Assembly (NCBI RefSeq): GCF_021869535.1
Contig: NW_026262707.1
Span: 124,001-188,000 of the forward strand
Source of the DNA: Mytilus californianus
Taxonomy: Eukaryota
Direction of reading: 5' to 3'
Length of the DNA stretch: 64,000 nt
Position numbers and translations under genes: made by a program
Shown: positions 28,563 through 60,133 of the stretch, piece after piece
Position numbering within the stretch: the stretch's first letter is position 1
How the letters are laid out: the number at the start of each line of letters is the position of its first letter
The notes under the pieces: generated by a model
Database searches by the model: none
What the model saw: the letters and a program-made list of their open reading frames with translations, nothing else
What the model was told of the DNA's origin: nothing

Positions 28563-28580
28563 GTGAAAAGATCCATCAGC

Positions 28581-32778: not shown

Positions 32779-33762
32779 CGCGGGACTGTTAAGGCATTTT
32801 TGGACATTTTTTCCCGGATTTTTTACCAAGCGGAGATAACTCCATGTTCCTTATTATTATTCATGACGTCATCAATGCACACTGAGCGTCGCAAGGAAAG
32901 ATTTCGTTATATGGTAAATACAGACGATGCATTGTTGTCAAAAGTATTTCGATATGGTGTATAATTATTTAAGGTACTATGATTTGCCATACTAATTACA
33001 TTTATAAGTAAAGTTTATTTATCTTAGCAGTTTTTCTATCGCGGACTTGGCCCCGCCTATTCAGACTAAACGACCAATCAAAATCTCCTCGAGGTCTTTT
33101 GGATGCTTGTATTCTGAATGTTGAGGGCACCTGTTTGTTCAACGAGTAAAGTGACTTTTCCTAGAAAAACCTGAAATAAACTGTAGAATTATGTTTCTTT
33201 GGGCAAGAAAAGTGATTGTTAGGACATTTATGATCGCATGCATCAAGTAAGTCAAATAATAATGGAGAAAATACCTCTATTAGCGGATATATTGGTGTCA
33301 GAATGTCAATTTTTGACCAGAACACGTGCTTCTATCCTGTTGGTCGTGTCGCCTGCCTTAAATCCGTTGAATTAGCGATGCCTGTCAAGAGGATATTTAA
33401 TTTATCATTTCTTTAGTTTGATGATTTGCTATCTATTGCGAAAACCTGTCATATATATTCATAATAAAATTGCGCCTGAAAAAATTGCAGTTGAAATGAC
33501 CATTAATTGGCATTTCAAATACGAAGTATCTCCAGACATATGAAAATTTAAATACAGAATTCTTCAACTTTTGTGGCAGGCTATAAACTGAATAAGTACA
33601 GCTGTTCGGTGCATCTCTCTGTTTGCACAGGAATCTGAAATGTTATTAAAATCAAGGTGACACACATGCAGATGCACAGTGATTGGCTACTAAAATTTAC
33701 TGTCTATAATTTCATAATTCCTGTGTATTAACTTTTTAATTATTTTTTCTAAGTTATACTAA

Positions 33763-34266
33763 GGCCACACCAATTTGATTTCTTGTTTTACGGAGTTTTG
33801 ACCTCCAAAAATTGGGGCGAGCGAGCGATTTGAAAATTTTTGTAAAAAAATATTTAATCTGAAAATTTTTGAGCCGAAGGTTGAAAAGTAAAGGCGAGCG
33901 ATTATATTTTTATTTTTAAAAACTTAAAATAGTAGGTTTTTACAATATTAAAACTTGATTTATCACTTGTACTCTGACATTTCTTTTGTTTATGAAGTGT
34001 TTTTTCCCTGTTCACCAAGATATAATTGAATAATTAGATGGTGTATGTGTGCCAATAAGACTTCTCCATCCATGTCATAATCAGGTTGGGAACAACCCCT
34101 ATGTTATTAATATCCCATTTATAAAGGGGTCAATATAAGTTATAATATTTTTTTTGTTAAACACTTTTTAGTACTAAAGGGCTCATATTTTCCAAAAGAA
34201 TTATATATAATTAAAAAAAATTGGTGCGGGCGGGTCCGTCGAACAAGTAATTAAATTGGTGAGGCC
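33763..34266. mobile_element. PIF/Harbinger-type MITE
   Basis: TAA TSD both sides; TIR GGCCACACCAATTT / AAATTGGTGAGGCC. A related, more decayed element lies at ~41283-41738. Confidence 0.75.
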
Positions 34267-34399
34267 TAAACATCAAATGACCAAAAAAACACTGCACAAG
34301 TTGCAATATTTTAACTAAGGCTCCCTGTTTTTGTTGCAGAAGCTGTGAAACCCCAGCTCAATCATGATTCATTATATATATAAGTCTTAGTCAAATAAC

Positions 34400-34500
34400 T
34401 ATGACGTCTTTAAAGGCTATTATATTTTTTTTGCTTTGACGCCTTACGTCGCAGGAAGGCGTCAAAGCAAAAATTTAAAATAGCCTTCAAAGACGTTATA
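34400..34500. repeat. Near-perfect 45-bp-arm inverted repeat (10-nt loop)
   Basis: 34400-34445 pairs with 34456-34500 with a few mismatches; weaker outer pairing extends to ~34387/34523. Confidence 0.85.
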
Positions 34501-39900: not shown

Positions 39901-42900
39901 GAAAATTACAGCCTTTGGACTAATAAAAATATACACAGACTGATACACTCTTTTCGATGTGTCTTCAGATCTTGAGCTTGTTTTTAATATGTAAATATAT
40001 ATAGGAAGATGTGGTGTGAGTGCCAATTAGACAACTCTCCATCCAAATAACAATTTATAAAAGTAAACCATTATAGGTCAATGTACGGCCTTCAACACGG
40101 AGCCTTGGCTCACACCGAACAACAAGCTATAAAGGGCCCCAAAATTACTAGTGTAAAACCATTCAAACGTGAAAACCAACGGTCTAATCTTTATAAAAAA
40201 CGAGAAACAAGTATAAATTACATAAACAAACAACAACTACTGTACTTCAGATTCCTGACTTAGGACAGGTGCAAACATTTGCAGCGGGAAATCCAGTTAT
40301 GATGAGTTACGGATCAGCTTTAAGTTTCATGCTGCTCTGCTTATTTTTGCTGAAATTACAGACTCTAACTGAACTTGAAATAATCTGAAATAAACAGTTG
40401 AATGCTGGACCGTGCATGTTTCTGTCCCCACTTGTAATTGATATTGCAGGTTTTCACTTTATTTGAAAAGGGACCGTTTATGTCGTTCTGACACATCTTG
40501 ATTATACATGTACCCCCAAGTCCTATAAGTAATAGTTTCAATACTAGGATTCACTTTTACCTTTTTTGTCTTCAAAAAGATTCCTTTTAACTTGCAATCT
40601 TCTCTTCCTAATGGTTGTTCTACATGTACTTGCTGTACAACTTGACCTGTCATCATTGTCACACACAGCAGATTTCTTATCTGTAATAAGATTCACATTT
40701 TGATTATTGTATAGTGAAAAATTCAAATATTTGTCAACCCAATGCATGCAATAAGCCTTCCAAATAGATAACATCGTAGATCATGTACAATGTAGATAGG
40801 GAGCTACCATGGCCATTTAAACTGACAACTTTCATCATTTTCAGTTACATGTACATGTAGTTGTGAAGTTTGTTCACCAATGGATTCATAAATATAAAGG
40901 TATGAAATGAAATAAGAAATAAACTAACAAAGCCATAGCAAGAAAAAAAATAATCTACACTTTGCCGAGCAATTTATTTTATGGTAAAAATGGTATTTCA
41001 TAAATGCCAGTTTTCATGTAACTGATTGAATTTAAGTTTTTATAATAATTATCATACCTTTAATATATGAGTTGTATAGAGTTTTAACTTTGTCATCTTC
41101 CAAATGCTTATATCCTGAAAGATAAAACCTTGAACTTAAAAACTTCATCCATCAATCTTCAACTAATTGTAAAATAAATAGTTACAAATGTTTATAAATA
41201 TATCTATACATAGATAAGTTAGACTTGTTAATATATTTATAGGTATTGTATGTGTAATTGGAATACTAAAAATAATATGCCAAGGCCAGATAAAAATATA
41301 TGTGTGGTTACAGTTAAATACTTTTAAAAAATAGGTTCGGTAGGTGGGCAATTTCATTTTTTTTTTTCTAAATTTTTAAAATGGATTGTCAAAATCAATA
41401 AAAAAAATCGTGTGTTTACCAAAATTGATTCCGGTATTATACACGCCTCTTCAGGAAGTTCATCATTTTTCAAGTGTTACTGTGAAAAATAAATAGCGTT
41501 GCGTTTCTAGTTAATTTTGTTGCATTCTGTTATGAATTGTTGCATTTCAGAATGGATATTTTTTTATGAAATTCAGATGACAGGAATCTATGAATTTAAT
41601 TATTTAAAATTCACAATCCTCAAAATTTGATCAATTACTTTTTTTTCAGAAATGACAAAAAAAAAGTTCTAGGGTTGGGGGGTTTAAACCATGGTCAGTC
41701 TGGTAACTGGAACAATAAATATATTTTTTATTTAGCCCAATCGTGTAAAAAATAAATTTCTATACATGCCATTTCTATGCATTTTTCTTAACAATCAACA
41801 GAAATCTCATTTTAAAACAAAAGACTAACTTGTTGAAAGTTGTTTATCCATTACTTTTCTTGCAGCAAGTTTCTTCTCGCCAGTGTGTGCAGTATGGTTT
41901 GATAACTGGTGGTCTGTAAATAAGGATAAAGGAAAATAAAATTAGAATACAGTTTATTTACTTTTATATATTACTTTTCAGGCACAAAGACTACTGTTGA
42001 AAAGTTGTTGGTAATATGCAAAAGTAAAGATAAATGTTGAGGACCTCCAGACATTCTTCAAGGACCACAAGGGGGAAATGAGAATTCTTTGACAACAGGC
42101 TTTCATTCCAAAAAAAAAACTGGTATTTGTAAAGTTCGACTGGTTTACCAAAAAAAATGATAAGTATTAAAAATGGTGTAGAATTATTTTGTTAAGTTTT
42201 CAGTTTATGAGATGATGTGAATTGCAGCAATGGAAAATCACTCTTTCTTTTGTAGAATTTAACAAAGGTTCTTAATTTGAAGGTTTTTCATGTACCCACT
42301 TCATGAAATCACACATTTTTATGTCATACCTTAGATCAAATTGTTTTCAATGGAAAAAAGAAAATGGACATAATTATAAAAAACACAATAAGAAAAAGGG
42401 TGATCAATCATTCCAATATAATGTATAATACTGTTAAACAATTTTTGTAATAGATTTAAACCTTTACCATGGTCTCCAGAAAGGGAAACAATCTGTTTAG
42501 CTGGAATGGTCATTGGATCATCATCTGAAAGAAGAAAAATAAAAATATGGCTGAATTATTTGTCTTTTAAGGTTTTGCATTTTAGAAATATTCAAATTGG
42601 AGAAATCATGAACATAAATCACATTCACTTTGGACACTTTAAGACATTGAAATATAAGACAAATTCGTCAGTTTTGTGAATTGATAGTTTTGACCCTTAT
42701 AGTTTACTAGGTAGCTCATTTGGAAGAGCACCTCAACCCAGTTTGAGGAGGTTCCAGGTTCAAATCCTGGCCTAGTACTTATGTTGGCTTCAGTTTAGTG
42801 TAGTTTTTTTACGCCCGATTACGGGACGTTAATGGTATACTTACTGTTGACCGTCCATTGTCAACATGATGGACATTATTTCAAAAACACTTTAACTAAT

Positions 42901-45900
42901 ATGCATGAAACTTTGGTGAATTGTTTATATCTATGACGTGAGCTCCCTCTATTATTTTTAGGAATTTCCGACTTACAGGTTCTGAGTTTTGGGGTTTTAT
43001 TCAATAAAAAAGGGGGTAATTTCCAGTTTTCAAACAATAACTCAAAAACAATTTCACCAATTTGTAAGAAACTTTGGTGAATTGTTTAGTTCTATCGACA
43101 AAGCTCCCTTTTGATTTTTATAAATTTTAGACTATACGTTTCCGATTAATGGGGTTTTATTCATTACGAAAAATAACTCAAAAATGCTTTCTGAAACTTT
43201 GGTAAATTGTTTATATCTATTTTTGTAAGCTCCCTTTAGATTTTTTTAAATTTTCAATTTTGCGTTTCCAAGTAATAATATTTTATTTGTCTATAGTCTG
43301 ACAACAGATTTACTAAGTATTGCGCAACAGCAAAGTGTATTGCACAACAGCAAGACATCTTTAATTGTATATAAATTCAATTCATTCAACCTTTTTCAAG
43401 TTCATTGACTACATTTATTCAGAAACCTATGAAAGTCAACTATTAAATTACAATCGAAATTCAGACCTGTATCAAGCCTCTGTGGGCGTACCCAGTTGCG
43501 CTCAGTGAAGCAGATTATTGGTTATTATTATTTGTTGTTTTATGCTCGTTGGTCGGGTTGTTATCTCTTTGACCCATTCCCCATTTCCATTCACAATTTT
43601 TATTTACGTACTAATATACTGATGTAAATAGTGAACCATGTGTGCGTTTTTTATGCATTAACACTTACTAAAGGCATTATGCACCTCAGCTGTCAATGTG
43701 ATTTGTTTTTTTCGTACAAGTGGACTCTTCTTCTTTTCTGAAATAAAAAGACATTTTCATTCAGTTTAATTGTTACTAAAAATGTAATATACAAACAATG
43801 AGTATACATATTTCATATTGATAATGCTGCAATGTTTTTTATTTTAGTATATACCTGTCTCTTCATGATTGCTGTGATTTTCCTCCACAGTCGGAATAAA
43901 TGCAGGTTCCTGCTCATCATCTGAAAAAAATTGAAAACTGGTAAGAAATAAGTTTTTGGAAAGTTTACTATAGCTTACTATAGCTACTTTATTAAGGCAT
44001 CGGCCTCAAACTTCCGGTGACAGATTACCGCAAATGTTCTGCTCCAAAATAATTAATACTAGTATTAAAATTCTGGTTTATATTGAAAGATGCTTTTGAA
44101 ATTTTACTAAAAGTCAGATGAAATATTAAAGGTTGAATGACAGCAAAAAGTCTTATTATAAAATTAAATCAGGATACTTTGACCTACCAGATTGCTCATC
44201 ATTACTTGTTGTTGTTGCCTGGATAGGACGATTGACTGTTGTATCTAAAAAAAAAAAAAGATAATTATGTTGCTTGACCGATAATACTCTTTGTGCTGCT
44301 AAGTTGCTCAAGTCTATTGATCAATATTAGGTTGTAACATGTCTTATATTGATAATGCTGCAATATTTTTTATTTTAGTATATACCTGTCTCTTCATGAT
44401 TGCTGTGATTTTCCTCCACAGTCGGAATAAATGCAGGTTCCTGCTCATCATCTGAAAAAAAATGAAAACTGGTAAGAAATAATAGTTTTTGGACAGTTTG
44501 CTGTAGCTTACTATAAAGAGGAGATAACTCTGCAAATGGGAGATAAATCCTGTAATCCGCAAGTAGGGAATAAACTAAAATCAACAAGTTTGACAAATAC
44601 AAAATAAGAAACAAACAATATAACTGAAATTCATAAATATAAACACAAATCATTTTATACTAGAACACACCCGCGAAATCGCTGGCATTTAGAGCTTGGT
44701 TGAAAGTATGTAAACTGTTGAAAGGAGAATTTTTGTAAAAGATTTCATGTCTGGAGAATTTCAGAAAAGGTATCAAAATTCATAGGTACTTGGAGCGGAG
44801 CATTTTATTGTTATCTATCATACGATTGGTTCTCAATGTTAAAACCGGAAGTCATATCTGACTTAAAAGTCGGTTTGCATACGGAATCAATATCTGGACG
44901 CCTTTATTTTCGTTTTTTCTCCCAAAATAACCCAAACTGAATAGTCATAAGAATGGATGACAAATGCGACTATGCACGGTACCTATAAGACACAGAGGCA
45001 TGATGATTAATTTATTGTGGGAGGAAGAGAAGCGACACACAAAATGAGGTCTTCTCGTTTAATAGTATAGATCTGTAAATAGTTCAGATATCATACCCCA
45101 ACAAACAAATTGGTATTGATGAAACATCACAGACCATCATACATGCAGTGTGCTACTGAGGATGTGCATGATTAGTATAATCCGGTCCGAATATTTCAAT
45201 GGAGATGAGAACTTGCTCAGTGAAATATGGGACAGGGTGTAGAACCGATGTTACTTTGCTGAAATTGTTTATAATTGCTTTACAATGAACACATCGTTAC
45301 ACATGATAACACTTTGTTCAGTTGAGACAAATTTATTACTTTTTCTGCGTTATGCGTTATTCTTTATAACAATTCAAAGACACATGTTAATCATTAAGGT
45401 AATTTGATAAGAATATTTAATATATATGTTTGTTTTTTAGTATATACCTGTCTCTTCATGATTGCTATGAGTTTCCTCCACAGTCGAAATAAATGCAGGT
45501 TCCTGCTCATCATCTAAAAAACATAGAAACTGGTAAGAAATAATACAGTTGAGGGGTGTGGAAATGCCTTGCATCACTCATACAGTGTACATTGAAACAC
45601 ATGGACAAGTATTTTTTTTAAATCTTACTTTCAATGGACAAAAAAAAATCACTTGACATAGTTCAATTTCATAAAAGATGTAGAATTACTCTTGCAACTT
45701 TTACGGGACAAGTAACATTTACAGCTGTACTTGTCCAGAGACAAATGCTTACAACAAATATTTCCACACTGCTGCAGTTTTTGAGACAAAATGAATGAAA
45801 AAAAACATCTTGCAATGATATATTGAATTTAATGAGAGAAAAAAGTTATAACACTACAAAAAATACTTCTTTATATATCAAATGTTCTTATGATTTCTAT

Positions 45901-48900
45901 TGTTCCTAGATATAGGAAGATGTGGTATGAGTGCCAATGAGACAACTCTCCATCCAAATAACAATTTATAAAAGTAAACCATTATAGGTCAATGTACGGC
46001 CTTCAACACAGAGCCTTGGCTCACACCAAACAACAAGCTATAAAGGGCCCCAAAATTACTAGTGTAAAACCATTCAAACGGGAAAACCAATGGTCTAATC
46101 TATATAAAAAAAAACGAGAAATGAAACATCAAATGAAAGCAAAAAGTCTAATTAAACAAATATTTCAGGATACTTTGACCTACCAGATTGCTCAACACTA
46201 TTTGTTGTTGTTGCCTGGATATCTGTGCTGACATTTGGATAGGGGACTTCTGTGTCTACAAGAAATAAGGTTTAGTTTTATATAGTTGTGTGCTTTTATT
46301 ATGTTGATTTTCCTCTTCATAGATTTTTGGCCGGGTTTGACGAAAATGGGTACAGAATTTGTAATATAAATCTTCCAGAATTCTGATAAAAATAAACTGA
46401 ATTCCAGGAAAACACCTGTTGTTGGGTTCCTGCCACTGAATTGGTAATTTTAAGGAAATTGTGCAGTATAATATTGGTTATTATCTTGAATATTATTAAA
46501 GATACAGATAAACAATTTACAACAAAAATGTTCAGCATAGTAAGATTTACAAAAAAGGAAAACTTACCAAAATTTTCAATTGACCCCCTAAGGAATTAGT
46601 GCCGTTTTAAAACAATTTCACAATGCTTTTTTTTCTTGCTTTGGAAGAAAATATGACAGATACAAAGATTTATTTGCATTTTTAAGGAATCATTTAATAT
46701 ATAATTATACATTGAAAAGCAAAAAATAATCATTGATGAAGGATTTAAACAAACAAAAGTTACAGGTGAGCAATTCCAGCTCTTGAGCGCCTTTTGTTTT
46801 TTGTATTTTGCACTTAAAAACCTGGCCATTTAAGGCTTTGGTCAATTTTGTGCTGCTGAGGTTCCAATATGGTTGCAATGAATGCATAGTAAGTTATTGT
46901 TCAGTTAAGACACATGTACATGTATTACCTTTCTTTCTTTCATTCAACACTATAACAATTTTTCCATCTTGACCCCTTTTTTTTAACTTAAGTAAAGGCA
47001 ATGACAGATTTTTTGTTTCATATTGATCTATGCAATTTTGCCAGATTTTTTCATTTTCCTCATGTTTTTGTTTTAAGGAAGAAGATCTAAAATGCAAAAG
47101 AAGAGGCCCATCATCTCTGAAAGGAGGTTCCTGCTGACTGTCATGAAAGACTACAGAGTCACCATTGAAGTGCCACCAGATGTTTTCTCCAGGTTTAACA
47201 AATTCAGCAATCCTGCTTAAATGTGTTTGATACATAGATGATTTGTTCATTAGGATGTCTTTGTTAAAAATAGAACTTGTTCTTTCTGGTAGTAGTTTTG
47301 CTAGGCGACTTATCTCACATTCCTGTTTTTGTAAGGAGTCTATTCTATCATCAGCTTGGGATTGACAATTGTATCTGATGATAGCATTGTCAATAACATC
47401 ACCAGGTTTTCTGTTTGATGTGGTCTCGGAAATTCTTCTAAGAAGTCCAAAGGATCTCTCCTCATCTTCAGTCAGAACAGATTTTGTGTTCATGATCCTG
47501 TATGTTTCAGCTAGATGTGTAACAATGGAGTGGAAATGGTTACCATAGAACTTCCTTTGGGTCATTTTCACAGGATTAGCAATTACAGACTTGGCCAATA
47601 CTCCAAATAAAAAGGTGATGTTGAAAAGGCGAAGTACTTGCCTTGGACTTCTTTTCTCTTCAGGGCTATATGCAATGTGAATAATTTCCACCATGGAAGA
47701 AACCATCTTGACTATATCATAAGATATCTTGCCATCTAAAAAGAGAGAGTGAACCAATTTCTCCAGTTTGATGGCAATACATCTGGCATCGGAACCCTTA
47801 AGTTGGTTTTTATCACCAATGGCCTTTGCTGTAAATTTTTCCAGTGCCATCTTTGTCTCAGGATCTTCTATATGGTGTGGAAGTTCAGATAAAACATTTT
47901 GAACCACATTTGTGATATCATGCAAGGGTTCACAGTGCATTATCTCGTAATGGGCAATATGATTTTCAGAGGCTGATAGTGATGGATCATTTAGCATCAG
48001 TGCTGGTGGTCTGCAGATTCCATGCAACAGCTCTGTCAGTTCTTGTTGTAGGGATGGCTTATCTTCTTTCATGATTTCAATTTTCCTATGATCTAATTCA
48101 TTGATAATTTCTTCTTTTTTTAAATTTTTGAAGGGATTGAAATTACCTCCCTCAATTTTTGTCCACAAATACCCTTCAGTTACAAGTTTTCTTCTGTCTT
48201 CCAGATCCTGAGGTTTTTGTTTGTAGCAGCTTTCCAGATTGATATGGGCTTTTGATGGAATACCACAAAGACAGCTGTATGCTCCACCTCTCTGTTGTCC
48301 TGCTTCAAACTGTCTTGCGGGGTTGTCCCCACTGAAAACTCTTATTTTGTCTGTAAAAGTGACATCTTGGAATTTGGTTCCTTCAGATAATTCTACAATG
48401 TCCTCCATTCTTGTCTGTATATAAGTTCTTTGATCTTGATCTGTACTTGCTGAAATTGTATCCCAGTTTATTCAACATATTCTCCAGAGACAGATTTGAT
48501 CAGTTTCAAATTCTATCAAGGAACCTGGTCAGCAACTTTATGTATTTTTCGCAACAAAGAATTCATTGAATAAACTTTAAAAGTTTTTTTTTTCAAAAAG
48601 TGAAATGGGCTTTTAATAAGGGTAGGACTGGAGAGTTAAGTATTAATTTTGATTTAAAATCCATTACATCTCGTTTGATTTTTTTACAATGGAAACTAGA
48701 GGCCCTTAACAAGAAATGCCATCATTAGCAATATTTGGACTCGGACCGAGTTGTATCATTTGTAATCATACCCCATTTTATTTTCACGCAATAGGACAAA
48801 TAAATGTATTATTGGTAATCATACCCAATTTTGTGTTCATGGAATAGGACAAAGAAATGTACTATTGGTAATTGTACCCCATCATACCCCATTTTATTTT

Positions 48901-51900
48901 CATGGAATAGGGAAAAGAAATGCATTATTGGTAATCATACCCCATTTTATTTTCATGGAATAGGACAAAGAAATGTATTATTAGTAATCATACCCCATCT
49001 TATTTTCATGGAATAGGACAAAGAGTTGTATCATTACAAACTCTTTCCATGCAATTTTTATCGAGCCTGCGACTTTTGTCGCAGAAAGCTCGACATAGGA
49101 ATAGTGATCCGGCGGCGGCGTTAGCTAACTTCTTAAACGCTTTATATTTTAGAAGGTGGAAGACCTGGATGGAATGATTGTAAGCTGTACATGTCTAGCT
49201 GGCAGGTGTCATTTGACCTTGACCTCATTTTCATGGTTCAGTGGTCAAAGTTAAAATTTTTAGTTTTGGTCTTTTTTTCTAATACTATATGCAATAGGTC
49301 AACTATATTTGGTGTATGGAAATATTTTATGATCTACATGTCAGTCGCACAGGTTTTATTTGACCTTGACCTCATTTTCACAGTTCATTGGTCAGTGTTA
49401 AGTTTTTGTGTTTTGGTCTGTTTTTCTTAACCTATAAGCAATAGGTCAACTATATTTGTTGTATGGAAGAATTGTTAGCTGTGCATGCCTGCCTGGCATA
49501 GTTCATCTGACCTTGACCTCATTTTCATGGTTCATTGGTCAATGTTTAGTTTTCTTGGTTAATGTTAAGTTTATGTGACAGTTGTAATAAAGCTTTATAT
49601 TAAGGACTATCAACACGATATCAGTGATTAGTAAAGAAGGCGAGACATTTCAGCGTGTGCACTCTTGTTTCCTTATACTTTATCTATTTGTTGTCATGTA
49701 GTACTATTTTTACCTGATTGTCCTAAAATATACAGTTGTGGCCTTTCAACAATTTTCTGTATATCTATATCTTTGATGGTAGGATTTCTTTCCAGATACT
49801 CTTTGCTTGTTAGAAAATTTGCAGAGTCATACATGTAACTTATCATGAAATTTATGTAGGTATGGCTAAGTATATCAGAATGGTCATGCCAGACTTTAAT
49901 GTATCTTGATCTTTGAATTGCCTTTAAGATGTTTCGTTTTGTTTCTGTGTTGCTATTGCAGTGATGATTCTCTTGCAAGTTGATCAGACACTTGTCTAGC
50001 TCAGGCTGTGTTAATTTGTCATAATACTCATCAGTGTTCACTCTAAGAACCCCAGCTGCATGTAACCTGTGGTTTTCTTTTTCCAATATTTCTTTTAATG
50101 GAATTTTTCTACCATAGACCGTTTTTGTTTTTTCTATAAGGTTTCCTTCCTTATTTATAGTTGTTGTTATGAAGGTTTTTGGAGCTATTTTTTTTCCAAT
50201 GTTGATTTCGCCTGACTCTACCTTTTCCTTAACTATACCTCTCAGTATTTTGGCTGACCTTGGTGTATTGATTGAAATGTTTGTCTTCAGCAACCTTTTT
50301 TTGGCACGACGAACGCGGCGCAAGTAGTCCCTTCCACTGACTCGACTTTGCTTGTTAAATTTGTAAACATCTATTCCTAATAAAAAAATAAAGGTAGATT
50401 GAAAGCAACTGTTTCAGACAATCAAAATTTATTTTAACATTATCAAAAGGGATGCCAAATTAGATTTTTGACGAATTTACTAAACATAGAATATGATAGT
50501 GCAAGTTGGGCATCCGTGTACTATGGACACATTCTATGAATGCTACATTATGGTTCTGATCGGCTTATAATAGCAACTCCTGTATTTTTTTTAAATCAAT
50601 TTGATAATTTAAAGCACTACATTTATTCTTAAAAATGTCTTACAAAAATATTTTTTACTGTTTTTGCCATTCAGGAGTTGTGGATTGCTTGATTACAAAT
50701 TTGTACTTTTAATAGTAAACTTTTAAATTAAGTTTAAAACATTCCATATGGATCTATCAAAATTTGATATTGAGTAAATATTCAAAGAATAAAGGAGTCT
50801 GTAAAAATTGCTTTCATTATACCTTGCTCTTTAGCATATGCCATTAAAATCTGTCCTGAATTCAGTGGCATTTTGTTATTTAGATTTTTAAAGTTGTGTT
50901 TTCTTGCCATGCTTGTCCAATTTATAGTTTGACCCTCTTCAATTGTTGATAATTCCTCAATAAAATTCTCTCTGTCAAATTTGTATTTGTCAAAATTTCC
51001 ATGATGTATTTTTGGTTTGAGTTTTCCAAGATTTTCTTGCTCTATTTTTTTTTGGGTGATCTTTCTGGACTCTTCTTTGGTTGAAAAAAATATCATCCTC
51101 TCGCGGTCATGGCTTTTATAAGATTTCCCTAATGTTAAAAACTGCCTAACATCATTGTCATTGTCAGTTAATGCACTGTTAATGGATTGCATGGACATGT
51201 TGAGTGTTTGTTCCATTGTGTTTTTCCTGCTTTCTGCGGTTTCAGTTGGTGACAGATGAAAAGATTCAGCAATTGCAGTTTCAAAGTTTACATCAAATTT
51301 TGAAGCAAATACTGGGTTTATAACTTGCACAACAGCTTTTGTCACCTGTTAAAACAGTTTTGTAGCAGAATAATGGATTGTATTACAAATGAATTGTATG
51401 TTGTTCAATTGAAGTAGTTCTGGGGGAATGAAATATTTTTGGATCTAAGACTATTTAAATTTTAATGTATTGACAAAATATTTATGTTGGATAATAGAAA
51501 ATGTTTATACTGCCTTTTCTCTTATTTTAATGCTTGTTTCACATTTATCCACCATTGTGAGAAAAATAATTATCGTGTTCTTGGCATGATTGGTTGAATT
51601 TTAATTATGACATCAAAATTTCTTGCTTTTATCTAAATTTTTCAATGTGACGTCATGAAAAAGGGCAACCATGCTTGATGGCGTCACATATAAAGAACAC
51701 AACTTTCTGCAGTTTTTTGGAATGACAGGACAAAGTTTGTATTAGATTTTGTTTAAAAGTCAATAGAGAAAGAGATTCCACCGCTTTATCTTGTGTACTA
51801 CAAAATTTCTCCACTCAAGACAATTTGATTTTAAAATCTAAAAAGCTTGGCAAGCTTCACATATAAAAATCAATATCCCCAGAACTACCTTTTATAATAT

Positions 51901-54900
51901 AGTATGAATGTATTTAACTGAAAATATTTTAAGTACTTTGTAAAGGAACATAACTTATAGTTAAGACTAAACTTATTTTGTTAAACTAGTCACTTAATTA
52001 CACATCTAATTGTAATATGTTTTATTTAAAAGACTACAAATATTGTAACAAATATAGTAGATTCATTTATAAAAAAAATATTTGCATTCTTTTGAAGGTG
52101 ATTATGCCTTTTTATGGTAATGTTTTATAAACTGGAGTGTGCAAATTTATATGCATTTGTAGCATAACAGATTGCATGAATTGATTTTTATTTAATGCTG
52201 TGCAATTTAAGGAATCGATATACTTATATGAGGTTTTGGTATTTTTTGTCATATGTTCAGACACCTTTGTTTTTTCCCCTCAGATACAAGGTTTTAATAT
52301 AAGGATAAAGTCAGAGAAAGCCTTTTCCAGCCATTTTTTAAACATCAAATATCTTGAGAATGAGTTGAATAACCTATAAATATTTAAAGCTTATTTTGTT
52401 CCTTAATTAATGCTGTACCTATTTTTGTCTCGCCTTGACGGAGTCAAAAAGCGAGACATAGGTATGCTGTTTCCGGCGGCGGCGGCGTCAACAATGTATT
52501 AGTTTGTGATAAGGTCTAGTTCATGGTGAACCACTAATGGTAGGTCAATGATATTTGGTATGCAGTTGTATTAGCATTGGCACATCTTATTACCATGGAG
52601 ATTATTTGGCTCTGCCCCCTTAGTCATGGTCTATAGATTTTGAAAATTTTGCTAAGTTAACATGTATTAGTTTGTGATTAGGTCAGTTCAAGGGGAACCA
52701 TTAGTGGTAGGCCAATGTTAATTGGTGTTCAGTTGTATAAACATTAGCACATCTCATTTCCATGGAGAATATTTGGCCCCGCCCCCTCAGTCATGGTCTA
52801 TTGACTTTGAAACTTTTGCTTAGTTTACATGTATTAGTTTGTGATTAGGTCAGTTTAAGATGAACTGCTAATGTTCAGTCAATGATATTTGGTATGCACA
52901 TGTATTGGCATTTGCAAGTATCTTTTCCATGGAGATTATATAGCCCCACCCCTGATCATGGTTCATTGACTTTGAAACTTTTACACAGTTTACAAGTTAA
53001 TGTTTGTGTTTAGGTTTGTTTAAAGGTAATGACTTATAAAAGTCAATGGTATTTGGTATGCAGTTGTATTAGCATTGGCACATCTCATTCCATGGAGATT
53101 GTTTAGCCATGTACCTTCAGTCATGGTTCATCGACTTTGAATATTTGCATAACTTAAATGTTTAAGTATTGCTATTTTGATTTCAACATTTGCATTATCA
53201 AAATTACAAAAAGGCGAGACATATCTCTGTGATAACAGTTTATTTGTATAAATTTTAGTTTGTACGTTTTAATTAAAAAAAAAAATTCACCCAAGTATAT
53301 CCTAATGGTTAGTATAATGATTTGGAAATGAAAATCAAAGGAGTCATAATAAAGATATTTTGGATCAAAATTAGAATAGTTCAATTTTAAAAATAAATTT
53401 AGGAAAATTTTGATTAATTCATTACATAATTGAATTTAATTGAATAAATTTTGCTTGATGAAAGAAAATTTGTATCATATAATTGCTTAATGTCTGTGTC
53501 ATTTTGGTCTCTTGTGGACAGTTGTCTCATTGGCAATCATACCACATCTTCTTTTTTATATTTGTGGAAAAATAAATAATAAAGGAGGAGGACCATTAAA
53601 TAGTAAAAATTTAAGAGACAATTAAGATTTAAAAAGTAAAACTCAAAATTGTACTATGATCTTTCAAGTTTTCCTAATTTGTATTGAATGCAATTTTTAT
53701 TTACTTCTGATTTGCCCATGAACACTGAAATACCATAAAGTATGAATAAATGAACTGTTTATATGTTGAATTTGTAATCAAAAGTATTAAGCTTAAGAAA
53801 CCAGTCTTCTTATTTTGTGATTTGCATATTATATCATTTACAATTTCAAACTTTTTTTTAATTAATGTTTTATACCAAATATTGTGTATTATTATGATGT
53901 CAGATCTTTTTGTATTTTTGAATATTTCAATGTATTAACAGTAATTGTTTTATGAATTAGTGTTAAAGGGAGACTATTCAGACAACTGTACAGCATTGAC
54001 AAATGAATTAATAAATCATTTTGAATAGTGAGCCAGACATCTTATCTTTAATATAAATTTAATTTACAAATACTGAAATAGATATAAAGTTAAAATTCAC
54101 TTCACCAGTAAAGCTGAAGGGCTAGAGATTTAGACAGTTAATTTTGACAAATTTTATTATAATTTTGATTATTAGGAAATTGGTCCTCATTCCAGTTGGC
54201 TGAACTCCCGACCTGAATAAATTTGTCATTGTATTAATTGATTTTTGTGTCAAAGACCAGTCATACCAACTTAATTTTTGAATAGTAGTGAAAGTTTAAA
54301 TGTTAATGTTGAAAAGGCTTGTTTATAAAAATAATCATTTAGGTGCCAGTACCAGGTGAAAACATGACAAAAAAACCCACCATAGTTTACATTGATTTTT
54401 ATTCATAACTTATTAAGTAGAATTACAAAAAAATAGTTTTCTTTTCCTTTTACTGTTCTGATAATAGAAGATACAATTTGGTTGAAATGCACTAAAAATA
54501 AACATTTAAGGGGAGATCACTCTAATTTGCTATCATTCTAACCAATTCTCCAACTTAGTTATTTCCATTACCAGAAACACAAACAACTGATTCACTTTTT
54601 CTAACTCATAATGAATGAACTTCAAAGTAGAATGATTAGCTTGGTGTTTTTTTTTATAACCTAGTTTTATTTTTTTACCATTTTGCCTGACCCTTATAGG
54701 CAGTTAAAACATGGAAGGCAATTTACCTTGTCATGCATACATCCCACTTTTTAAACCGAATTTAATTTTGAAACAGATAGTCTGATATGATCAATGATTA
54801 CAATCTATAAATCTTATATAAATTTGCGTATAAGGAAATATATTAGTATGATTCTTGTTGAGAAGGCTTGCGTTAGTGGTTCTTTAAGTTATTTGTTTTA

Positions 54901-55762
54901 TAGAAGTAAGGATAATCGCTTTCTGTAAAGGAATTTATCTGTGTATAAACTATAGATCACATTGCACATAAATTTTATTAAATTCCTTCATCAATTTATT
55001 GGTTTGCGGTTTTCACGATGAACTTTAAAACCTGCAGGCCCTGATCTCAAATTTAGGAATTTTTTGTTAGATTCTGTTGGCCTGCAGACACGATTTTTAC
55101 AAGCCCGAAAGCAGTTTTACAAGCCTGAGCTGCTGGGCCTGTAGCTTAGCGTGATACTGGGCCACTTTGTCAGTGAATTGATCCAGTTTATACACCAATT
55201 ATTTTTAATTTTAAGAATTTTTATTTTACCACACCTTATTAATTGATGGAGAGGCAGAAAACTCTTCCTGAATTGTGTCCACCAGATTTGTACAAGTAGA
55301 CTTAAGATTTTCTGCCTTATTTTCAACTTTGCTACATGTGTGTAATGACGAAAACACATTGTATTTAGTGGTGCAGATTGGGCATTCTTCAAGCGTATGC
55401 TGATGTTTTTCAATTTCTTTCATTTGCATCCAGTTGACCAAACTAAACTGGGATACAAATTTTTCCTTTTCTCCAGTTTTGTTTTTGTTGACATAGTATT
55501 TATTCTGGTATATATAATCTTGTAGCTTTGGCAGTTTTAGACGAAAATAATTGTAGCTGCTGATGAGCATTTTTGGATATTTTCCCATGAAAATGCTGTA
55601 ATTTTCATAACGCTGTTGAATCGACAAATGATTATTATACTGGGGCTTAAGAATTTTATCAGGCTCTGGAATTTGTTGTTCTGACTGGTTATAACAGTCA
55701 ATTGCAGTCTTGTCCTTTGTTGACCTTGCAATAATTACTTTGGCAAAATTGCAATAGTTCAT
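36922..55762 (-). CDS. Predicted 13-exon DDE transposase, ~1373 aa
   Basis: Hand-assembled GT-AG exons: 55762-55235, 51345-50823, 50376-49714, 48449-46929, 46255-46184, 45513-45448, 44451-44386, 44244-44188, 43920-43855, 42524-42468, 41913-41830, 40680-40561, 37220-36922. Total 4122 nt, phases consistent, no internal stop. Motifs VWHDHS, FSGDNPAR, YSCLC, EPLHD, NHFHSIVTH, EDEERSFGLLRR. Extra 5' exons are possible. Confidence 0.82.
38146..39292 (+). mobile_element. HINE/pearl-like non-autonomous element (Helentron-associated type)
   Basis: Starts in a T run, (GGC)n microsatellite near the 5' end, central TGACCTTGACCTCATTTTCATGG repeats, 3' AAGGCGAGACATTTCAGCGTGTGCACTCTTGTT. A shorter copy is at 49055-49670. 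Confidence 0.72.
39660..39990 (+). mobile_element. HINE-like element fragment (AGTCCCCTACC...GGGGACT head, GTCC/GTCT microsatellite)
   Basis: Related copy at ~61380-61820; similar architecture at ~42806-43370. Confidence 0.55.
42705..42778 (+). ncRNA. tRNA-like cloverleaf with non-canonical 8-nt anticodon loop
   Basis: Acceptor TACTAGG/CCTAGTA (7/7), D stem GCTC/GAGC, anticodon stem CCTCA/TGAGG, loop ACCCAGTT, T stem CCAGG/CCTGG with TTCAAAT loop. A-box-like TAGCTCATTTGG and B box GGTTCAAATCC; T run ~30 nt downstream. Confidence 0.68.
44660..45071 (-). mobile_element. Non-autonomous Helitron in a transposase intron
   Basis: A|TCTATACTATTAAACGAG...GATTTCGCGGGTGTGTTCTAG|T; same family as 26650-27361. 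Confidence 0.85.
48755..49035. repeat. ~53-bp tandem repeat, about 5 copies
   Basis: Unit ATTGGTAATCATACCCCATTTTATTTTCATGGAATAGGACAAAGAAATGTATT. Confidence 0.88.
49055..49670 (+). mobile_element. HINE/pearl-like element, internally deleted relative of 38146-39292
   Basis: Same 5' (GAGCCTGCGACTTTTGTCGCAGAAAGCTC) and 3' ends. Confidence 0.72.
52422..53241 (+). mobile_element. HINE/pearl-like element
   Basis: TTTTTGTCTCGCC...GGCGAGACA subterminal inverted repeat, (GGC)n, ~155-160-bp central repeats. Confidence 0.72.
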
Positions 55763-57389
55763 TGTATTTGATTTTTTTTTGCAAGTTATATCATTGCATA
55801 TTCTTGTTTGTATTATTGTTCATAATATATATGTCAGATTTTGAGATGCAAAATAAAATTCAAGATGAAAAATGTTTGTGTTATGACTCAGATGACTTCC
55901 ATGTTTGGTTTGCTGCTGCTGCTATTCTCTGCTGAATACAGAAAATTTTCTGAAGATTTTTTATGATATCACTTTTGAGAAAAAAGATAGACATGCAACC
56001 AGAAAATTACAACAATGATTAAAAAACAAAATAAAGCAGAAAAAAAAATGGAAAGAAATATATGAGACTAGAGTCTGGATGCTCCACATAAAAAGTTTGA
56101 TTATCAATTGATTAAAACTACTTATTCTCAGGGGAGGATGCATAAATGTGTTTTTTTTGTATTTTTTTTTCAAATACACATAAAATATGTGATGGGTTAA
56201 TGTTAAGACCTGGTCATACTATAGACACCAGTACCCCCCCCCCCCCCCCCCCCCCCCCATTTTCTATCCGGCATGTTTTAAATGTTTCTGTGTATGTTGA
56301 TGAAGTAAACATTTCATTTTAGGAGGTTAAAATAAAATATTAGAGCACAACTTAGTTCTTTATTTGAAAAAAAAGGCTAAAAAATTGGGTCGCTTGTGAT
56401 GGAACTTTGATCCCTGATATGGTCATCTGGAAGGCTTTATAACTCACTATCTGCAACTGAAAAAAAAACATAATATTTACTGAAATGTTATTCTGCAGCT
56501 GTAATATATATCAGCAACATCATGCATTTAAAGGTAAGTTTTTTTTTCACACAAAAAATCAATTTAAGAAAAAAAAATCCTCCTAAACAAACGACATTTA
56601 TACAAAAGCTGGAGTTTTATTTCAATAATTTCTGTATGAAATAGCTTTAGAAGTTATTGAAAAACGTATTACTTAATATATGTACAGAGATTGACGCTTA
56701 TTTTATTAAAATATAGGTATATTGTCCTCTCGTCGATTTATTTTCATGTTGAAAAGACCGCCAGAATAATTTACAGAGTTGTGTCCCTTTGACGTCACTT
56801 GAACGTTTGAAAGTAATGACGTACATTAAAAAGTTTGACATTGGTCAACTTCAGAGCGAAAGTTCTAGAATTAATCATCTGTATTTTTCTAATATGATTA
56901 GCGTTTTCAAATCGGAACATTCTCAGGATTATGAAAACTGATATACAATTGGCGTGGCAATATTGGTGAATTAAATAGATAGCGTTGTTTACTTAAAAAG
57001 GTTGATCGTGACGATTTTTCGCTTGTTTATTTTAATTTTTTATTATCTCTTACAAGTATTCACCAGTGTATAGCATTTTTCTTATTCCACGTACTTTTAC
57101 CGTTAAAATGAGACCGAAAGGAAATATTTACGATAAGTGAACGCACTAGAACTTTACGGAAAACTATAATTTTATATATAAATACTACAGTAGTCAGGTG
57201 ATCGTCACGTGACTTTTTTCCCAGGGTAAATCATAACAAAATGAAACATAATTTATTGTTTTATCATAGAATACCACTGATTAGACGTTTCCCGTTCATA
57301 CAGCAATTATGTACCGCTTTGGTGGTCTTATTGTTTATTATGCCCAAATAGCTAAAAACAGTACTGAATGGCCTTAACCATCCCGCGTA

Positions 57390-59326
57390 AAGTGGCTCCA
57401 AAGCACGGCCATACCATACCTCGTTTGGAATTGTGCGCTGCAGTTCTGGCAGTCGAACTGTATGAAACTATTTGCGAAGAACTGAAAACAGAATTTCAAC
57501 AAGTGCAATTTTTCACCGACAGCAAGGTTGTATTAGGATACATAAACAACGAAACAAAGCGATTTTATCTGTATGTTGGAAATCGTGTGGACAGAATCAG
57601 GAGATCGACAAAACCAGAACAATGGTCATACGTACCTACCTTACAAAATCCAGCCGATGATGCTTCTCGTTCTATACGACCAGAAAAGCTTAATCAAAGT
57701 CAGTGGCTTGTAGGTCCTACTCAGTTTCTTTGTAAGAAAAACACCATAAATAGCAAAATTGAAGAAGACGAGTTCCCTCTTATTTTACCAGAAGAAGATA
57801 GAGAGGTCCGCGTGGCAAAAACACTTGTAACTAAACCTGCAATTGGCTCTCAAAGATTTGAACGTTTTTCTCAGTGGAAAACTCTTTTTTCAGCTATACA
57901 AACTCTCAGATGTTTTATTGTAAAGCAAACTAATAGACAAGAGTCTAGTAAAACTGATTCGTTTCTAGATGCACAGAATTTAGTTATAGGTATTGTTCAG
58001 AGAGAAGCTTTCAGCATTGAATATAAGGCACTGATGAACAAACAGAAACTTCCTGCAAACAGTAAAATTTTGCAATTAGACCCGTTTATTGACAATAAAG
58101 GTTTACTCCGTGTTGGTGGTCGTTTGAGCAATGCAAACATATTTCCCAATGAAATGAAGCCACTCATCATACCTAAGCATCATATTGCAACATTACTTGT
58201 GAGACATTATCATGAAAAAGTAGCGCATCAAGGACGCCATCTCACTGAAGGAGCTTTGCGATCGGCAGGATATTGGTTGATAGGAGGAAAAGGTCTCATT
58301 TCATCTGTGATTCATAAATGCATAAAATGTCGTAAACTACGTGGAAAAGAAGAATTTCCAAAAATGGCTGACTTGCCATTTGACCGATTAGATCCAGCAC
58401 CTCCATTTTCATATGTTGGAATTGACGTATTTGGTCCTTGGACTATTACTACCCGAAGAACTCGTGGAGGTCAGGCACAAGGTAAACGTTGGGCTGTAAT
58501 GTTCACATGTCTTGTGGTTAGGGCTGTACACATTGAAGTGATTGAGGAAATGTCGTCTGGTTGTTTCATCAATGCATTACGTAGGTTTTGTGCTTTAAGA
58601 GGCGAAGTAAAAATCTTAAGATCTGATTGTGGGACAAACTTTGTTGGGGCACTGAGTGAACTTGATGTCAACGTTATAAATATTGGAGATCGACCAATAA
58701 AAAACTATCTCAGTGACAAGAACATAAATTGGATTTTCAACGCACCTCACTCTTCACACATGGGTGGCAGCTGGGAGCGTATGATTGGGATAGCGAGAAA
58801 TATTCTTAACAGCCTCTTTATGGAAACGAAACAATTAACACATGAAGTATTAACAACGTTTATGGCCGAAGTAACATCTATTATGAACGCAAGACCCCTG
58901 GTACCGATAGATATGGATCCTGACAATTCATTCCTGCTTACTCCTTCAACTTTGCTCACTTTGAAAAGTGAACATACTGTGCGATCTTTTTCAATAGAGG
59001 ACTTTTGCGATAAAGATTTGTTAAAATCTCAATGGAGATGCGTTCAACAACTTGCAAACTCATTCTGGAAACGTTGGAGAACTCAATATTTGCCTACTTT
59101 ACAAATGCGACACAAATGGAAACAAGAGTGCAGAAACTTGACTGAAGGTGACATTGTTCTTATGCGTGATGTTAGCTTGCACCGTAATGACTGGCCTATT
59201 GGTGTTATTGAACAAACATATGCAAGCTCTGATGGTCGCGTCCGTGAAGTTCAAGTGCGTCTCGGGAAGAACAGGAAGTTATTCACTAGACCTGCTAATG
59301 AAGTAGTATTTGTTATGTGTAAATAA
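57390..59326 (+). CDS. BEL-B RNaseH(C)-integrase, 3' part of interrupted polyprotein
   Basis: Resumes KVAPKHGHTIPRLEL. Removing the insertion and one TA restores GGA AAA GCT AAA GTG (GKAKV) and a single 6135-nt ORF (2044 aa). Confidence 0.93.
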
Positions 59327-59440
59327 CTTGTGAACTATATAGAATGAGAACATTTTTGATTGTGTACTTGGACAAACTTTTTTGATTTTTGAAGTATTGT
59401 TAAATTTTTTATTAGTGATATATTCATATCAGACGGGGAG

Positions 59441-60133
59441 TGTAATGCCAAGAATATCATTAGAGTTATCCCTCTTTATACGCAACCTGCATTTTTGATA
59501 ATTGTGGTTAATCCGACTTGTTTTTGTTTTACACATTGTTTTTACATTTCCTGCAGCATGGCTTGATAAATTTTTGAACATAATTACGAAGAACATTATC
59601 ATTCTCCTTGTCCCTTGGTGAATTACGATGTAAGTAATAATGCCATTATGTACTATATATTCTAGTTAAAGCTATTATTATGTTATTTGCGGTATAAGTC
59701 ATGAGAAAGCATATATCCAAACAGCTTACATTCTACGAACGATGGCATTTGTGTAAATAATCATGTGTGAACTTTGTAATATTTTATTTGTATGCGAAAA
59801 CAGTATTATTTGGTATATTTCTAAGTCATATGTAATTTTTATGAAGACAGCAATTTTTGTACAACTCTAGTCAAGTCAGTTCAGTACATTCTCCCCCTTT
59901 TTTGTCAATTGTGTTTTTCATTGATTTGAGTGTTTTCAATCATAGATTTTTTGTATTTTATTACTACAGTTGGTAGTTAACAATGTTAGTTATTAGTTTT
60001 TATTTTTTATATTGTAGCTTTTCACCAAATGTATGTGGCTTCATGATCTGTCAGCTCCTGACGCATTGAATGTTTAATTGAATAAAATGATCTACATATA
60101 TATGGTTTAACTCTCTGCGCCCAAGGCAGAACA
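59441..60133 (+). repeat. BEL-B 3' LTR
   Basis: Same length (693 bp) and apparently same sequence as 27870-28562. Confidence 0.97.

What the first reader, a model, noticed from the sequence alone, without database searches (positions are those of the whole stretch)
46929..55762. Intact spliced transposase whose motif order mirrors RAG1 core
Seen: in order VWHDHS, FSGDNPAR + YSCLC, EPLHD, GNHFHSIVTH, EDEERSFGLLRR over four large in-phase exons with no stops. Known: mouse RAG1 has D600, D708, C727/C730, DALH (H795), NYFHKTLAH (H937/H942) and E962 (EGNESGNKLFR); DxPA after the second Asp is typical of CACTA/EnSpm enzymes. Inference: an active enzyme with mixed RAG1/Transib and EnSpm features, which may inform where RAG1 sits among CMC/Transib transposases.
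Basis: partly seen in the sequence, partly recalled or inferred. Interest (0 to 1): 0.8.

Follow-up and report, generated by a model that had tools for sequence, protein, structure and literature searches.

The report
Giant CMC-type DNA transposon in mussel
This is an intact four-exon transposase gene inside a 24.6-kb cut-and-paste transposon of a Mytilus mussel; its RAG1-like motif order and fold are real, but they are the published hallmark of the CMC/Transib group, so it is a new member of a known kind, not a new link to RAG1.

Summary
Four in-phase minus-strand exons with GT-AG introns encode an uninterrupted protein carrying every listed motif. It is 1089 aa, not 1373.

The gene lies in a 24,609-bp DNA transposon (32779-57387) with 17-bp imperfect terminal inverted repeats and a 2-bp duplication (TA). 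The transposon sits inside a BEL/Pao retrotransposon whose two LTRs are identical, so the insertion is very recent.

A high-confidence model of a 39%-identical homologue matches the RAG1 core best among solved structures (Z 19, 430 residues), then HzTransib (Z 15.9). Among predicted structures it matches CACTA (Transposase_21) and Plavaka transposases about as well.

The D, D, two-Cys, LH, H(4)H, E pattern is nearly invariant in 70 relatives from bivalves, sponge, cnidarians and amphioxus. Published work already gives exactly this pattern as the shared signature of EnSpm/Mirage/Chapaev/Transib/RAG1.

No Pfam model of RAG1, Transposase_21, Plavaka or DUF1258 hits any family member. The TSD and termini are not Transib-like, and no RAG2-like gene was found.

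No spliced RNA was seen in the runs examined, which is inconclusive.

Verdict: a young, intact, unusually large CMC-type transposon. Its lineage within CMC is unassigned. Its own peculiarities are C-x-C spacing, an inserted SAP-like motif and CGCGGG termini.

The parts
32779..57387 (-). Whole DNA transposon, 24,609 bp
   Evidence: Two M. coruscus copies (L001, L002; 95-97% nt identity) stop resembling the window exactly at 57387/57388. The inverted partner of that terminus lies at 32779. Removing the element and one TA restores the BEL/Pao pol reading frame.
32779..32795 (+). Left terminal inverted repeat (CGCGGGACTGTTAAGGC)
   Evidence: An 18-mer search with up to 3 mismatches found 2 sites in the window; 0.01 are expected by chance. 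End alignment.
57371..57387 (-). Right terminal inverted repeat (CGCGGGATGGTTAAGGC), on the 5' side of the gene
   Evidence: The same terminus is found in L001 and L002.
32777..32778 (.). Target site duplication TA, left copy
57388..57389 (.). Target site duplication TA, right copy
   Evidence: The other copies have CA and TT next to this terminus, so the dinucleotide depends on the target.
55235..55762 (-). Exon 1 (aa 1-176): conserved N-terminus with invariant C4, H122, C127, C130 (possible zinc finger)
50823..51345 (-). Exon 2 (aa 177-351): includes a small helical domain at about aa 290-350 that is modelled with high confidence
49714..50376 (-). Exon 3 (aa 351-572): start of the RAG1-core-like region and the first catalytic Asp (D515 in VWHD)
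46894..48449 (-). Exon 4 with stop codon (aa 572-1089): D613, C631/C633, SAP-like motif 680-715, H748, H878/H883, E899/E902
27870..60133 (+). Host BEL/Pao LTR retrotransposon that the transposon interrupts. LTRs at 27870-28562 and 59441-60133 are identical; 5-bp TSD CTGGT

Best explanation
The stretch is the transposase gene of an autonomous cut-and-paste DNA transposon of the CMC group (CACTA/EnSpm-Mirage-Chapaev; 'CMCT' when Transib/RAG1 are included). The host is a Mytilus mussel. The element is 24.6 kb long. It has about 17-bp imperfect TIRs that begin CGCGGG and made a 2-bp target duplication. The four-exon gene encodes a 1089-aa protein. Its C-terminal ~630 residues are predicted to fold like the RAG1/Transib core. 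That core is an RNase H-like domain carrying D515, D613 and E899 (with E902). It is interrupted by a large helical insertion that holds a probable zinc site (C631, C633, H878, H883), the LH motif (H748) and a SAP-like DNA-binding motif (aa 680-715). Shown here: the gene structure, residue conservation, fold similarity, TIRs and TSD, and insertion into a retrotransposon with identical LTRs. Inferred: the protein binds the TIRs as a multimer, cuts both ends with the DDE centre (probably through a hairpin intermediate, as in RAG/Transib/hAT), and joins them to target DNA with a 2-bp stagger. The RAG1-like motif order comes from the known deep kinship of CMC, Transib and RAG1. It is not a special intermediate state.
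For: Gene model and intact ORF. Family of over 120 uncharacterised homologues in bivalves, Ephydatia, Branchiostoma, Hydra and Paramuricea. Motif conservation. Model pLDDT 92.7, pTM 0.92. Foldseek: the top 43 PDB hits are all RAG1 (E about 1e-9), then HzTransib (7e-6), then Hermes and P element at E>0.01. VIA: RAG1 Z 19.0 over 430 residues (mouse 479-1004), HzTransib 15.9, P element 11.8, ISCth4 10, Hermes 6.8. Predicted-structure atlas: plant Transposase_21 cluster TM 0.61 over 447 residues, Plavaka TM 0.58. Language-model neighbours are RAG1 (0.89) and Transposase_21 (0.88). TIR, TSD and nested insertion. Host LTRs identical. Literature: the CMCT signature of 3 catalytic residues plus 2 Cys and 3 His, and TSDs of 2-5 bp (PMC12730594); CMC TSD range 2-4 bp (bioRxiv 10.64898/2026.08.26.747230).
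Against: No Pfam model of a named CMC lineage (Transposase_21, Plavaka, DUF1258) matches any of 70 members at E<=1, so CMC membership rests on motifs and fold, not on sequence statistics. The termini are CGCGGG..CCCGCG, not the usual CA..TG or CAC..GTG. The Cys pair is C-x-C, not C(2)C. The structure is that of a 39%-identical homologue, not of the window's own spliced protein. Residue-level superposition of D/D/E was not available; only secondary-structure positions and aligned ranges were. No spliced reads were seen, and RNA depth was about 0-1x in the one raw RNA run, of which 6% was read. Only one complete copy was seen, and the two M. coruscus copies are frameshifted. The 2 extra bases at the insertion site could also be read as element-terminal A..T with no duplication.
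Confidence: 0.85

Rival explanations
1. It is a Transib/RAG-like (RAGL) element, or a true intermediate between RAG1/Transib and EnSpm. On this view it is closer to the RAG1 ancestor than ordinary CMC elements are.
For: RAG1 is the best solved-structure match, and it scores above HzTransib. RAG1 clusters are the top named language-model neighbours, 0.89 against 0.88 for Transposase_21. Spacings resemble RAG1: D-to-D 98 aa against 108; Cys pair 18-20 aa after D2 against 19-22; E-x-x-E after H(4)H (mouse RAG1 numbering from established knowledge).
Against: The TSD is 2 bp, while Transib and RAG make 5 bp (PMC1131882). The termini lack the CACAATG/CACAGTG heptamer. No Pfam RAG1_* model and no RAG1 or Transib chain is hit by sequence or family profile. 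No RAG2-like or other second ORF of 110 aa or more lies in the element. Predicted CACTA and Plavaka structures match about as well. The motif pattern is common to all CMC lineages.
Confidence: 0.08
2. It is a structurally intact but functionally dead or silenced copy. The ORF is open only because the copy is young, and it is neither expressed nor able to move itself.
For: There were no splice joints and near-zero depth in the raw RNA run. The Logan contigs that hold it are unspliced and DNA-like. The TIRs differ at 2 of 17 positions. The related copies in M. coruscus are frameshifted or fragmentary.
Against: All catalytic and zinc-site residues are kept. The insertion is younger than a BEL element with identical LTRs, so the family was mobile very recently. 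Only 6% of one RNA run from an unknown tissue was sampled.
Confidence: 0.3
3. It is a domesticated, transposase-derived host gene, not part of a mobile element.
For: It has a long intact ORF with introns, and homologues are annotated as ordinary 'uncharacterized proteins' in several animal genomes.
Against: It lies between TIRs with a TSD, inside a retrotransposon. Near-identical copies sit at unrelated loci in M. coruscus and are decaying. There are many divergent paralogues per genome.
Confidence: 0.02

Closest known systems
CMC superfamily / 'CMCT clade' transposons (EnSpm/CACTA, Mirage, Chapaev; with Plavaka, ESTA, Lanisha, Transib)
   Same: [quoted passage not shown] TSD within the 2-5 bp range. 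A large insertion domain inside the RNase H fold. Predicted structure similar to Transposase_21 and Plavaka proteins (TM 0.58-0.61). Transposase gene with introns.
   Different: No hit to any Pfam model of these lineages. Cys spacing is C-x-C, not C(2)C. Termini begin CGCGGG, not CA/CAC. A SAP-like motif is inserted after the Cys pair. The size is 24.6 kb with a single detectable gene.
RAG1 core and HzTransib transposase (solved structures such as 6XNX, 4WWX, 6PQX)
   Same: Best solved-structure matches, covering the dimerisation/pre-RNase H, RNase H, zinc-binding and C-terminal parts of RAG1 (mouse 479-1004). Same order and similar spacing of D, D, 2 Cys, LH, H(4)H, E.
   Different: About 9-13% identity and no sequence-profile hit. 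2-bp rather than 5-bp TSD. No RSS-like heptamer/nonamer ends. No RAG2-like partner gene.
Chapaev / Chapaev3 transposons of animals
   Same: Similar host range (lancelet, cnidarians, molluscs). The LH and H(4)H motifs are listed as Chapaev hallmarks (PMC4079192). A Cys/His-bearing N-terminus.
   Different: Chapaev has CAC..GTG ends, 3-4 bp TSDs (TWA in Chapaev3) and an N-terminal two-zinc Chapa domain. Here the ends and TSD differ, and a Chapa fold could not be shown (N-terminal model pLDDT 63.6).
ESTA (fungal EnSpm-like transposons with TA duplications; PMC12730594)
   Same: CMCT-type transposase reported to resemble RAG1 by HHpred. TA duplication at this insertion.
   Different: ESTA is fungal and carries TET/JBP cargo. 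Here the dinucleotide next to the terminus is CA and TT in the other copies, so TA is probably not a fixed target. Kinship was not tested.

Membership tests
CMC / CMCT clade | DDE catalytic triad on an RNase H-like fold | tested here: met
   D515, D613 and E899/E902 are conserved (35/41, 61/63, 63/64 and 65/65). In the model of P0037 they sit on strand 1 (model residue 95), on the residue just after the fourth core strand (194) and at the start of a helix (476-479).
CMC / CMCT clade | LH motif and H(3-4)H between the second D and E | tested here: met
   EPLH748 is 69-70/70 conserved. H878-x4-H883 is 65/67 and 63/65 conserved. Signature as given in PMC12730594 and PMC4079192.
CMC / CMCT clade | C(2)C motif after the second D | tested here: not met
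   A Cys pair is invariant (62/62 and 63/63), but its spacing is C-x-C (C631, C633), one residue and not two. The pair is in the expected place, 18-20 residues after D613.
CMC / CMCT clade | TSD of 2-4 (2-5) bp | tested here: met
   2 extra bases (TA) at the one complete insertion. The empty site was rebuilt from the BEL pol frame. This rests on one copy only.
CMC / CMCT clade | Termini 5'-CA..TG-3' (CAC..GTG in EnSpm and Chapaev), stated as 'in most cases' | tested here: not met
   The termini read CGCGGG..CCCGCG in the window and in two M. coruscus copies.
CMC / CMCT clade | Sequence similarity to a named lineage (Pfam Transposase_21, Plavaka, DUF1258) | tested here: not met
   No such hit at E<=1 in the window's exons or in 70 family members. 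Only structure and language-model features connect them.
Transib / RAG1-like | 5-bp TSD | tested here: not met
   2 bp here. The 5-bp rule is from PMC1131882.
Transib / RAG1-like | RSS-like TIRs (CACAATG/CACAGTG heptamer) | tested here: not met
   The TIR is CGCGGGAYKGTTAAGGC.
Transib / RAG1-like | Significant sequence similarity to the RAG1 or Transib core | tested here: not met
   phmmer and a family profile against all PDB sequences hit no RAG1 or Transib chain. No Pfam RAG1 model was hit.
Transib / RAG1-like | RAG1-core fold | tested here: met
   Z 19.0, 430 aligned residues, rmsd 4.7 against mouse RAG1 479-1004. HzTransib Z 15.9. The model is of a 39%-identical homologue.
Transib / RAG1-like | Adjacent RAG2-like gene (RAGL transposons only) | tested here: not met
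   No ORF of 110 aa or more elsewhere in 32779-57387. Open stretches of 70 aa or more have no Pfam hit. A gene made of many small exons cannot be excluded.
Chapaev | N-terminal Chapa (NZD-like two-zinc) domain | tested here: inconclusive
   Only C4, H122, C127 and C130 are invariant in 5 N-termini. The N-terminal model has low confidence (pLDDT 63.6) and gave no fold match.
Chapaev | CAC..GTG termini and 3-4 bp TSD | tested here: not met
   Hallmarks as given in PMC4079192.

The most novel reading that the evidence does not exclude
This metazoan family has C-x-C, an inserted SAP motif, CGCGGG ends, a 2-bp TSD and no Pfam coverage. It could be a separate deep lineage of the CMC+Transib clade, none of EnSpm, Mirage, Chapaev or Transib. 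Its core resembles RAG1 at least as closely as HzTransib does, so it could serve as a useful outgroup or intermediate for rooting the origin of the RAG1/Transib core.
Probability: 0.2. Interest if true: 0.55.

Novelty: new member of a known kind. Interest (0 to 1): 0.3.

Why it matters
The finding does not change where RAG1 sits. The shared motif architecture of CMC, Transib and RAG1 is already published.

It does add three things:

1. A clean, very young and structurally intact CMC-type element in a mussel, nested in a zero-divergence BEL retrotransposon. This suggests the family was mobile very recently, at a size (24.6 kb) that is unusual for an animal cut-and-paste element.
2. A high-confidence structural model showing that a CMC-type transposase family with no Pfam coverage has the whole RAG1-core architecture, not only the catalytic residues.
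3. A widespread, unannotated animal protein family that genome annotators currently label 'uncharacterized protein' and that can now be flagged as transposase.

If the family proved to be a distinct deep lineage, it would be a helpful outgroup for RAG1/Transib evolution.

Tried and rejected
- **Pfam on the four exons and on 70 family members**: no transposase family, only SAP in 14 of 70.
- **Sequence and profile searches of PDB**: no RAG1 or Transib hit. The profile hit only a SAP domain (1ZRJ, E 0.015).
- **RNA evidence**. Three 'RNA?' Logan runs turned out DNA-like: their contigs are unspliced and depth is equal on introns and exons. One raw RNA run had about 0-1x depth and no joints, so the splice junctions remain without RNA support.
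- **Logan contigs** carrying the 96%-identical P0001 are unspliced.
- **Other end of the M. coruscus copies**: it lies beyond the 10-kb flank limit, so the TSD could not be checked in a second copy. L008 is only a fragment.
- **Ends of distant family members** in L006 and L007: no clear TIR pair, so this was dropped.
- **Subterminal repeat search** at both ends: nothing convincing.
- **Second gene in the 14 kb downstream of the stop**: no ORF of 110 aa or more, no Pfam hit and no atlas hit for the best 119-aa stretch.
- **N-terminal structure**: low confidence and no fold match.
- **Steps not run.** I did not run the large representative-protein search. It lists only the best 150 hits, which would all be close family members, so it could not settle the family's placement. 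The window's own spliced protein could not be folded, because tools take only unspliced references. A homologue was folded instead.
Full report
**What is in the sequence**

On the minus strand between 55762 and 46894 there are four long open stretches. Reading the boundaries base by base gives these exons: 55762..55235, 51345..50823, 50376..49714 and 48449..46897. The stop codon is at 46896-46894. All three introns are GT-AG and the frame is kept, with phases 0, 1, 1. It starts at the same Met as oyster and pearl-oyster homologues.

All six motifs are present in the stated order:
- VWHDHS at 512
- FSGDNPAR at 610
- YSCLC at 629
- EPLHD at 745
- GNHFHSIVTH at 874
- EDEERSFGLLRR at 899

The junctions have comparative support. 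P0037 is a 910-aa continuous ORF on an intron-free 3.3-kb contig. It aligns across junctions 2/3 and 3/4 without a gap and across junction 1/2 with a 3-residue gap three residues downstream. Oyster and mussel gene models use the same joints.

**The host genome and the family**

The closest proteins are Mytilus coruscus gene models and Logan contigs (96-99% identical). More distant relatives (30-60%) occur in other bivalves, the sponge Ephydatia, amphioxus, Hydra and a gorgonian. All are labelled 'uncharacterized'.

No Pfam family matches any exon. None of Transposase_21, Plavaka, DUF1258 or the RAG1 models matches any of 70 family members at E<=1. Only SAP is found, in 14 of 70.

| Residue | Conserved |
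|---|---|
| D1 | 35/41 |
| D2 | 61/63 |
| The two Cys | 62/62 and 63/63 |
| E and H of EPLH | 70/70 and 69/70 |
| The H(4)H pair | 65/67 and 63/65 |
| The two Glu of E-x-x-E | 63/64 and 65/65 |

**The mobile element**

Two M. coruscus copies at unrelated loci (L001, L002) are 95-97% identical to the window. They lose similarity exactly at 57387/57388. L002 stays collinear for at least 19 kb (to window position 38000), apart from a ~1.6-kb insertion of its own at window 44794-44808, so the large size belongs to the family and not only to this copy.

The terminal 18-mer has one inverted partner in the window, at 32779, with 3 mismatches; 0.01 such matches are expected by chance. The TIRs are about 17 bp, CGCGGGA(CT/TG)GTTAAGGC.

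The flanks read GC-TA|element|TA-AAGTG. Deleting the element and one TA restores an uninterrupted BEL/Pao pol frame (..GFVLGKAKVAPKHGHTIPRLEL..). This gives a 2-bp duplication. The same terminus is preceded by CA and TT in the other two copies, so the dinucleotide looks target-derived. One caveat: with a single complete copy, the two extra bases could also be element-terminal A..T with no duplication.

The host BEL element spans 27870-60133. Its 693-bp LTRs are identical and it has a 5-bp TSD, CTGGT. The DNA transposon therefore arrived very recently.

The rest of the 24.6 kb shows no second ORF of 110 aa or more and no domain hit. It is rich in high-copy repeats. The two M. coruscus copies are frameshifted and a third is a fragment. 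The window copy is the only intact one seen.

**Structure**

The tools would not take a spliced protein, so I folded residues 290-905 of P0037. It is 39% identical overall and 45% in exon 4, and all motifs are conserved. The model used a 70-sequence alignment and reached pLDDT 92.7 and pTM 0.92.

Foldseek against the PDB returned RAG1 for the first 43 places (E about 1e-9, TM about 0.5 over about 590 columns). HzTransib followed (E 7e-6 and weaker). Hermes and the P element came only at E>0.01.

VIA-align results:

| Target | Z |
|---|---|
| Mouse RAG1 479-1004 (430 residues, rmsd 4.7) | 19.0 |
| HzTransib | 15.9 |
| P element | 11.8 |
| ISCth4 | 10 |
| Hermes | 6.8 |
| Tn5 | about 6 |

In the model, D1 lies on a strand (residue 95). 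D2 is the residue just after the fourth core strand (194). The E-x-x-E starts a helix (476-479). Counting back from the aligned C-terminal ends puts these Glu residues within 2-3 residues of RAG1 E962/E965, and the His pair within 3 residues of H937/H942. This is an inference from aligned ranges, because no residue-level superposition was available.

Predicted structures in the ESM Atlas match about as well: a plant Transposase_21 (CACTA) cluster at TM 0.61 over 447 residues, and a Plavaka cluster at TM 0.58. Language-model neighbours of the core are RAG1 clusters (0.89) and Transposase_21 clusters (0.88).

The family profile hits a SAP domain in the PDB at the position of aa 680-715 of the window's protein. 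This is a DNA-binding motif inserted after the Cys pair.

The N-terminal 360 residues modelled poorly (pLDDT 63.6) apart from a small helical domain at about 290-350. They matched no fold.

**What is already known**

Kojima (2025, PMC12730594) follows Yuan and Wessler (2011). [quoted passage not shown] Its Figure 4 shows three catalytic residues plus two Cys and three His. It also says that these lineages mostly end in CA..TG and make 2-5 bp TSDs.

Zhang et al. (2014, PMC4079192) list C(2)C, LH and H(4)H as Chapaev hallmarks, together with CAC..GTG ends and 3-4 bp TSDs. Transib and RAG make 5-bp TSDs and have RSS-like ends (PMC1131882). CMC TSDs range from 2 to 4 bp. Chapaev carries an N-terminal Chapa zinc domain related to the RAG1 N-terminus.

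Finding it identifies the superfamily. It does not show a new bridge to RAG1.

**Classification**

The element behaves like a CMC-type transposon in four respects: a DDE core with an insertion domain, the Cys/His signature, a short TSD, and structural similarity to CACTA and Plavaka proteins.

It is not Transib or RAGL. The TSD, the ends, the absence of sequence similarity and the lack of a RAG2-like gene all fail.

It is not demonstrably Chapaev. The ends and TSD fail, and the Chapa domain could not be tested.

It departs from the textbook CMC description in four respects: C-x-C spacing, CGCGGG termini, the SAP insertion, and no match to any Pfam CMC model. Its exact lineage needs reference sequences (Repbase/RepeatPeps) that these tools do not hold.

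**Expression**

The three Logan runs guessed to be RNA carry unspliced contigs with equal depth on introns and exons, so they look like DNA. One raw RNA run (6% read) has about 0-1x depth on the exons and no joints. The Logan contigs holding P0001 are also unspliced.

**Verdict**

This is an intact transposase with a RAG1-like core, in a young 24.6-kb CMC-type element. The 'RAG1 mirror' is the known superfamily signature.

- Novelty: new member of a known kind.
- Interest: 0.3.
- Chance that the family is a distinct deep CMC/Transib lineage: about 0.2.

Noticed in passing
window 27870-60133: A BEL/Pao LTR retrotransposon with identical 693-bp LTRs (27870-28562 and 59441-60133) and a 5-bp TSD, CTGGT. 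Its gag-pol frame (28563-32778 plus 57390-59326) is open apart from the 24.6-kb DNA transposon inserted in it. It looks like a very young, otherwise intact BEL copy.
   Followed up: partly
window 48752-49645, 50481-50679, 52272-53141, 38592-39186: The introns and the 3' part of the transposon hold tandem arrays with 53/116-bp, 147-bp and 167-bp units. In public runs their depth is 1,000 to 50,000 times that of the neighbouring exons, so they are very abundant satellite or SINE-like repeats of the mussel genome. The same arrays are present in the M. coruscus copies.
   Followed up: partly
window 7168-7603, 11202-11620, 13620-14048, 14817-15245, 19608-20000, 63330-63750: A repeat of about 430 bp occurs at least six times in the window in both orientations (73-97% identity). 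It also occurs in M. coruscus loci L002 and L008. It is probably a SINE or MITE family.
   Followed up: no
window 39996-40200, 45907-46111 and inverted at 53515-53563: A 205-bp repeat (96% between the two copies) lies inside the transposon. A partial inverted copy sits in intron 1 of the transposase gene. It is a nested small element, not the transposon's own TIR.
   Followed up: no
window 44794-44808 against L001 19675 onward and L002 19280-20877: Both M. coruscus copies carry extra sequence at this point. It is at least 1.6 kb and is related to the repeat at window 61379-61819. The window copy lacks it. This is either an insertion shared by those copies or a deletion here.
   Followed up: no
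spliced protein aa 680-715 (window about 48020-48125, minus strand): A SAP-like helix-extended-helix motif sits inside the insertion domain of the transposase, between the Cys pair and the LH motif. Pfam recognises it in 14 of 70 family members, and the family profile matches PDB 1ZRJ there. I know of no report of SAP inside a CMC or RAG1-type core.
   Followed up: partly
L006 (ENA ERZ25071802 contig, 24.1 kb): A 32%-identical family member also lies next to Pao retrotransposon genes. It is flanked by arrays of a ~134-bp repeat in opposite orientations (3817-4843 against 6534-6823). The contig repeats itself with a period of about 14 kb. Whether this family favours BEL/Pao targets is unknown.
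   Followed up: no
window 43885, 44416, 45478 (+) and 59484-59507 (inverted): A 24-mer (CCACAGTCGGAATAAATGCAGGTT) occurs three times at spacings of 531 and 1062 bp inside the transposon. It occurs once inverted in the BEL 3' LTR. Its meaning is unknown.
   Followed up: no
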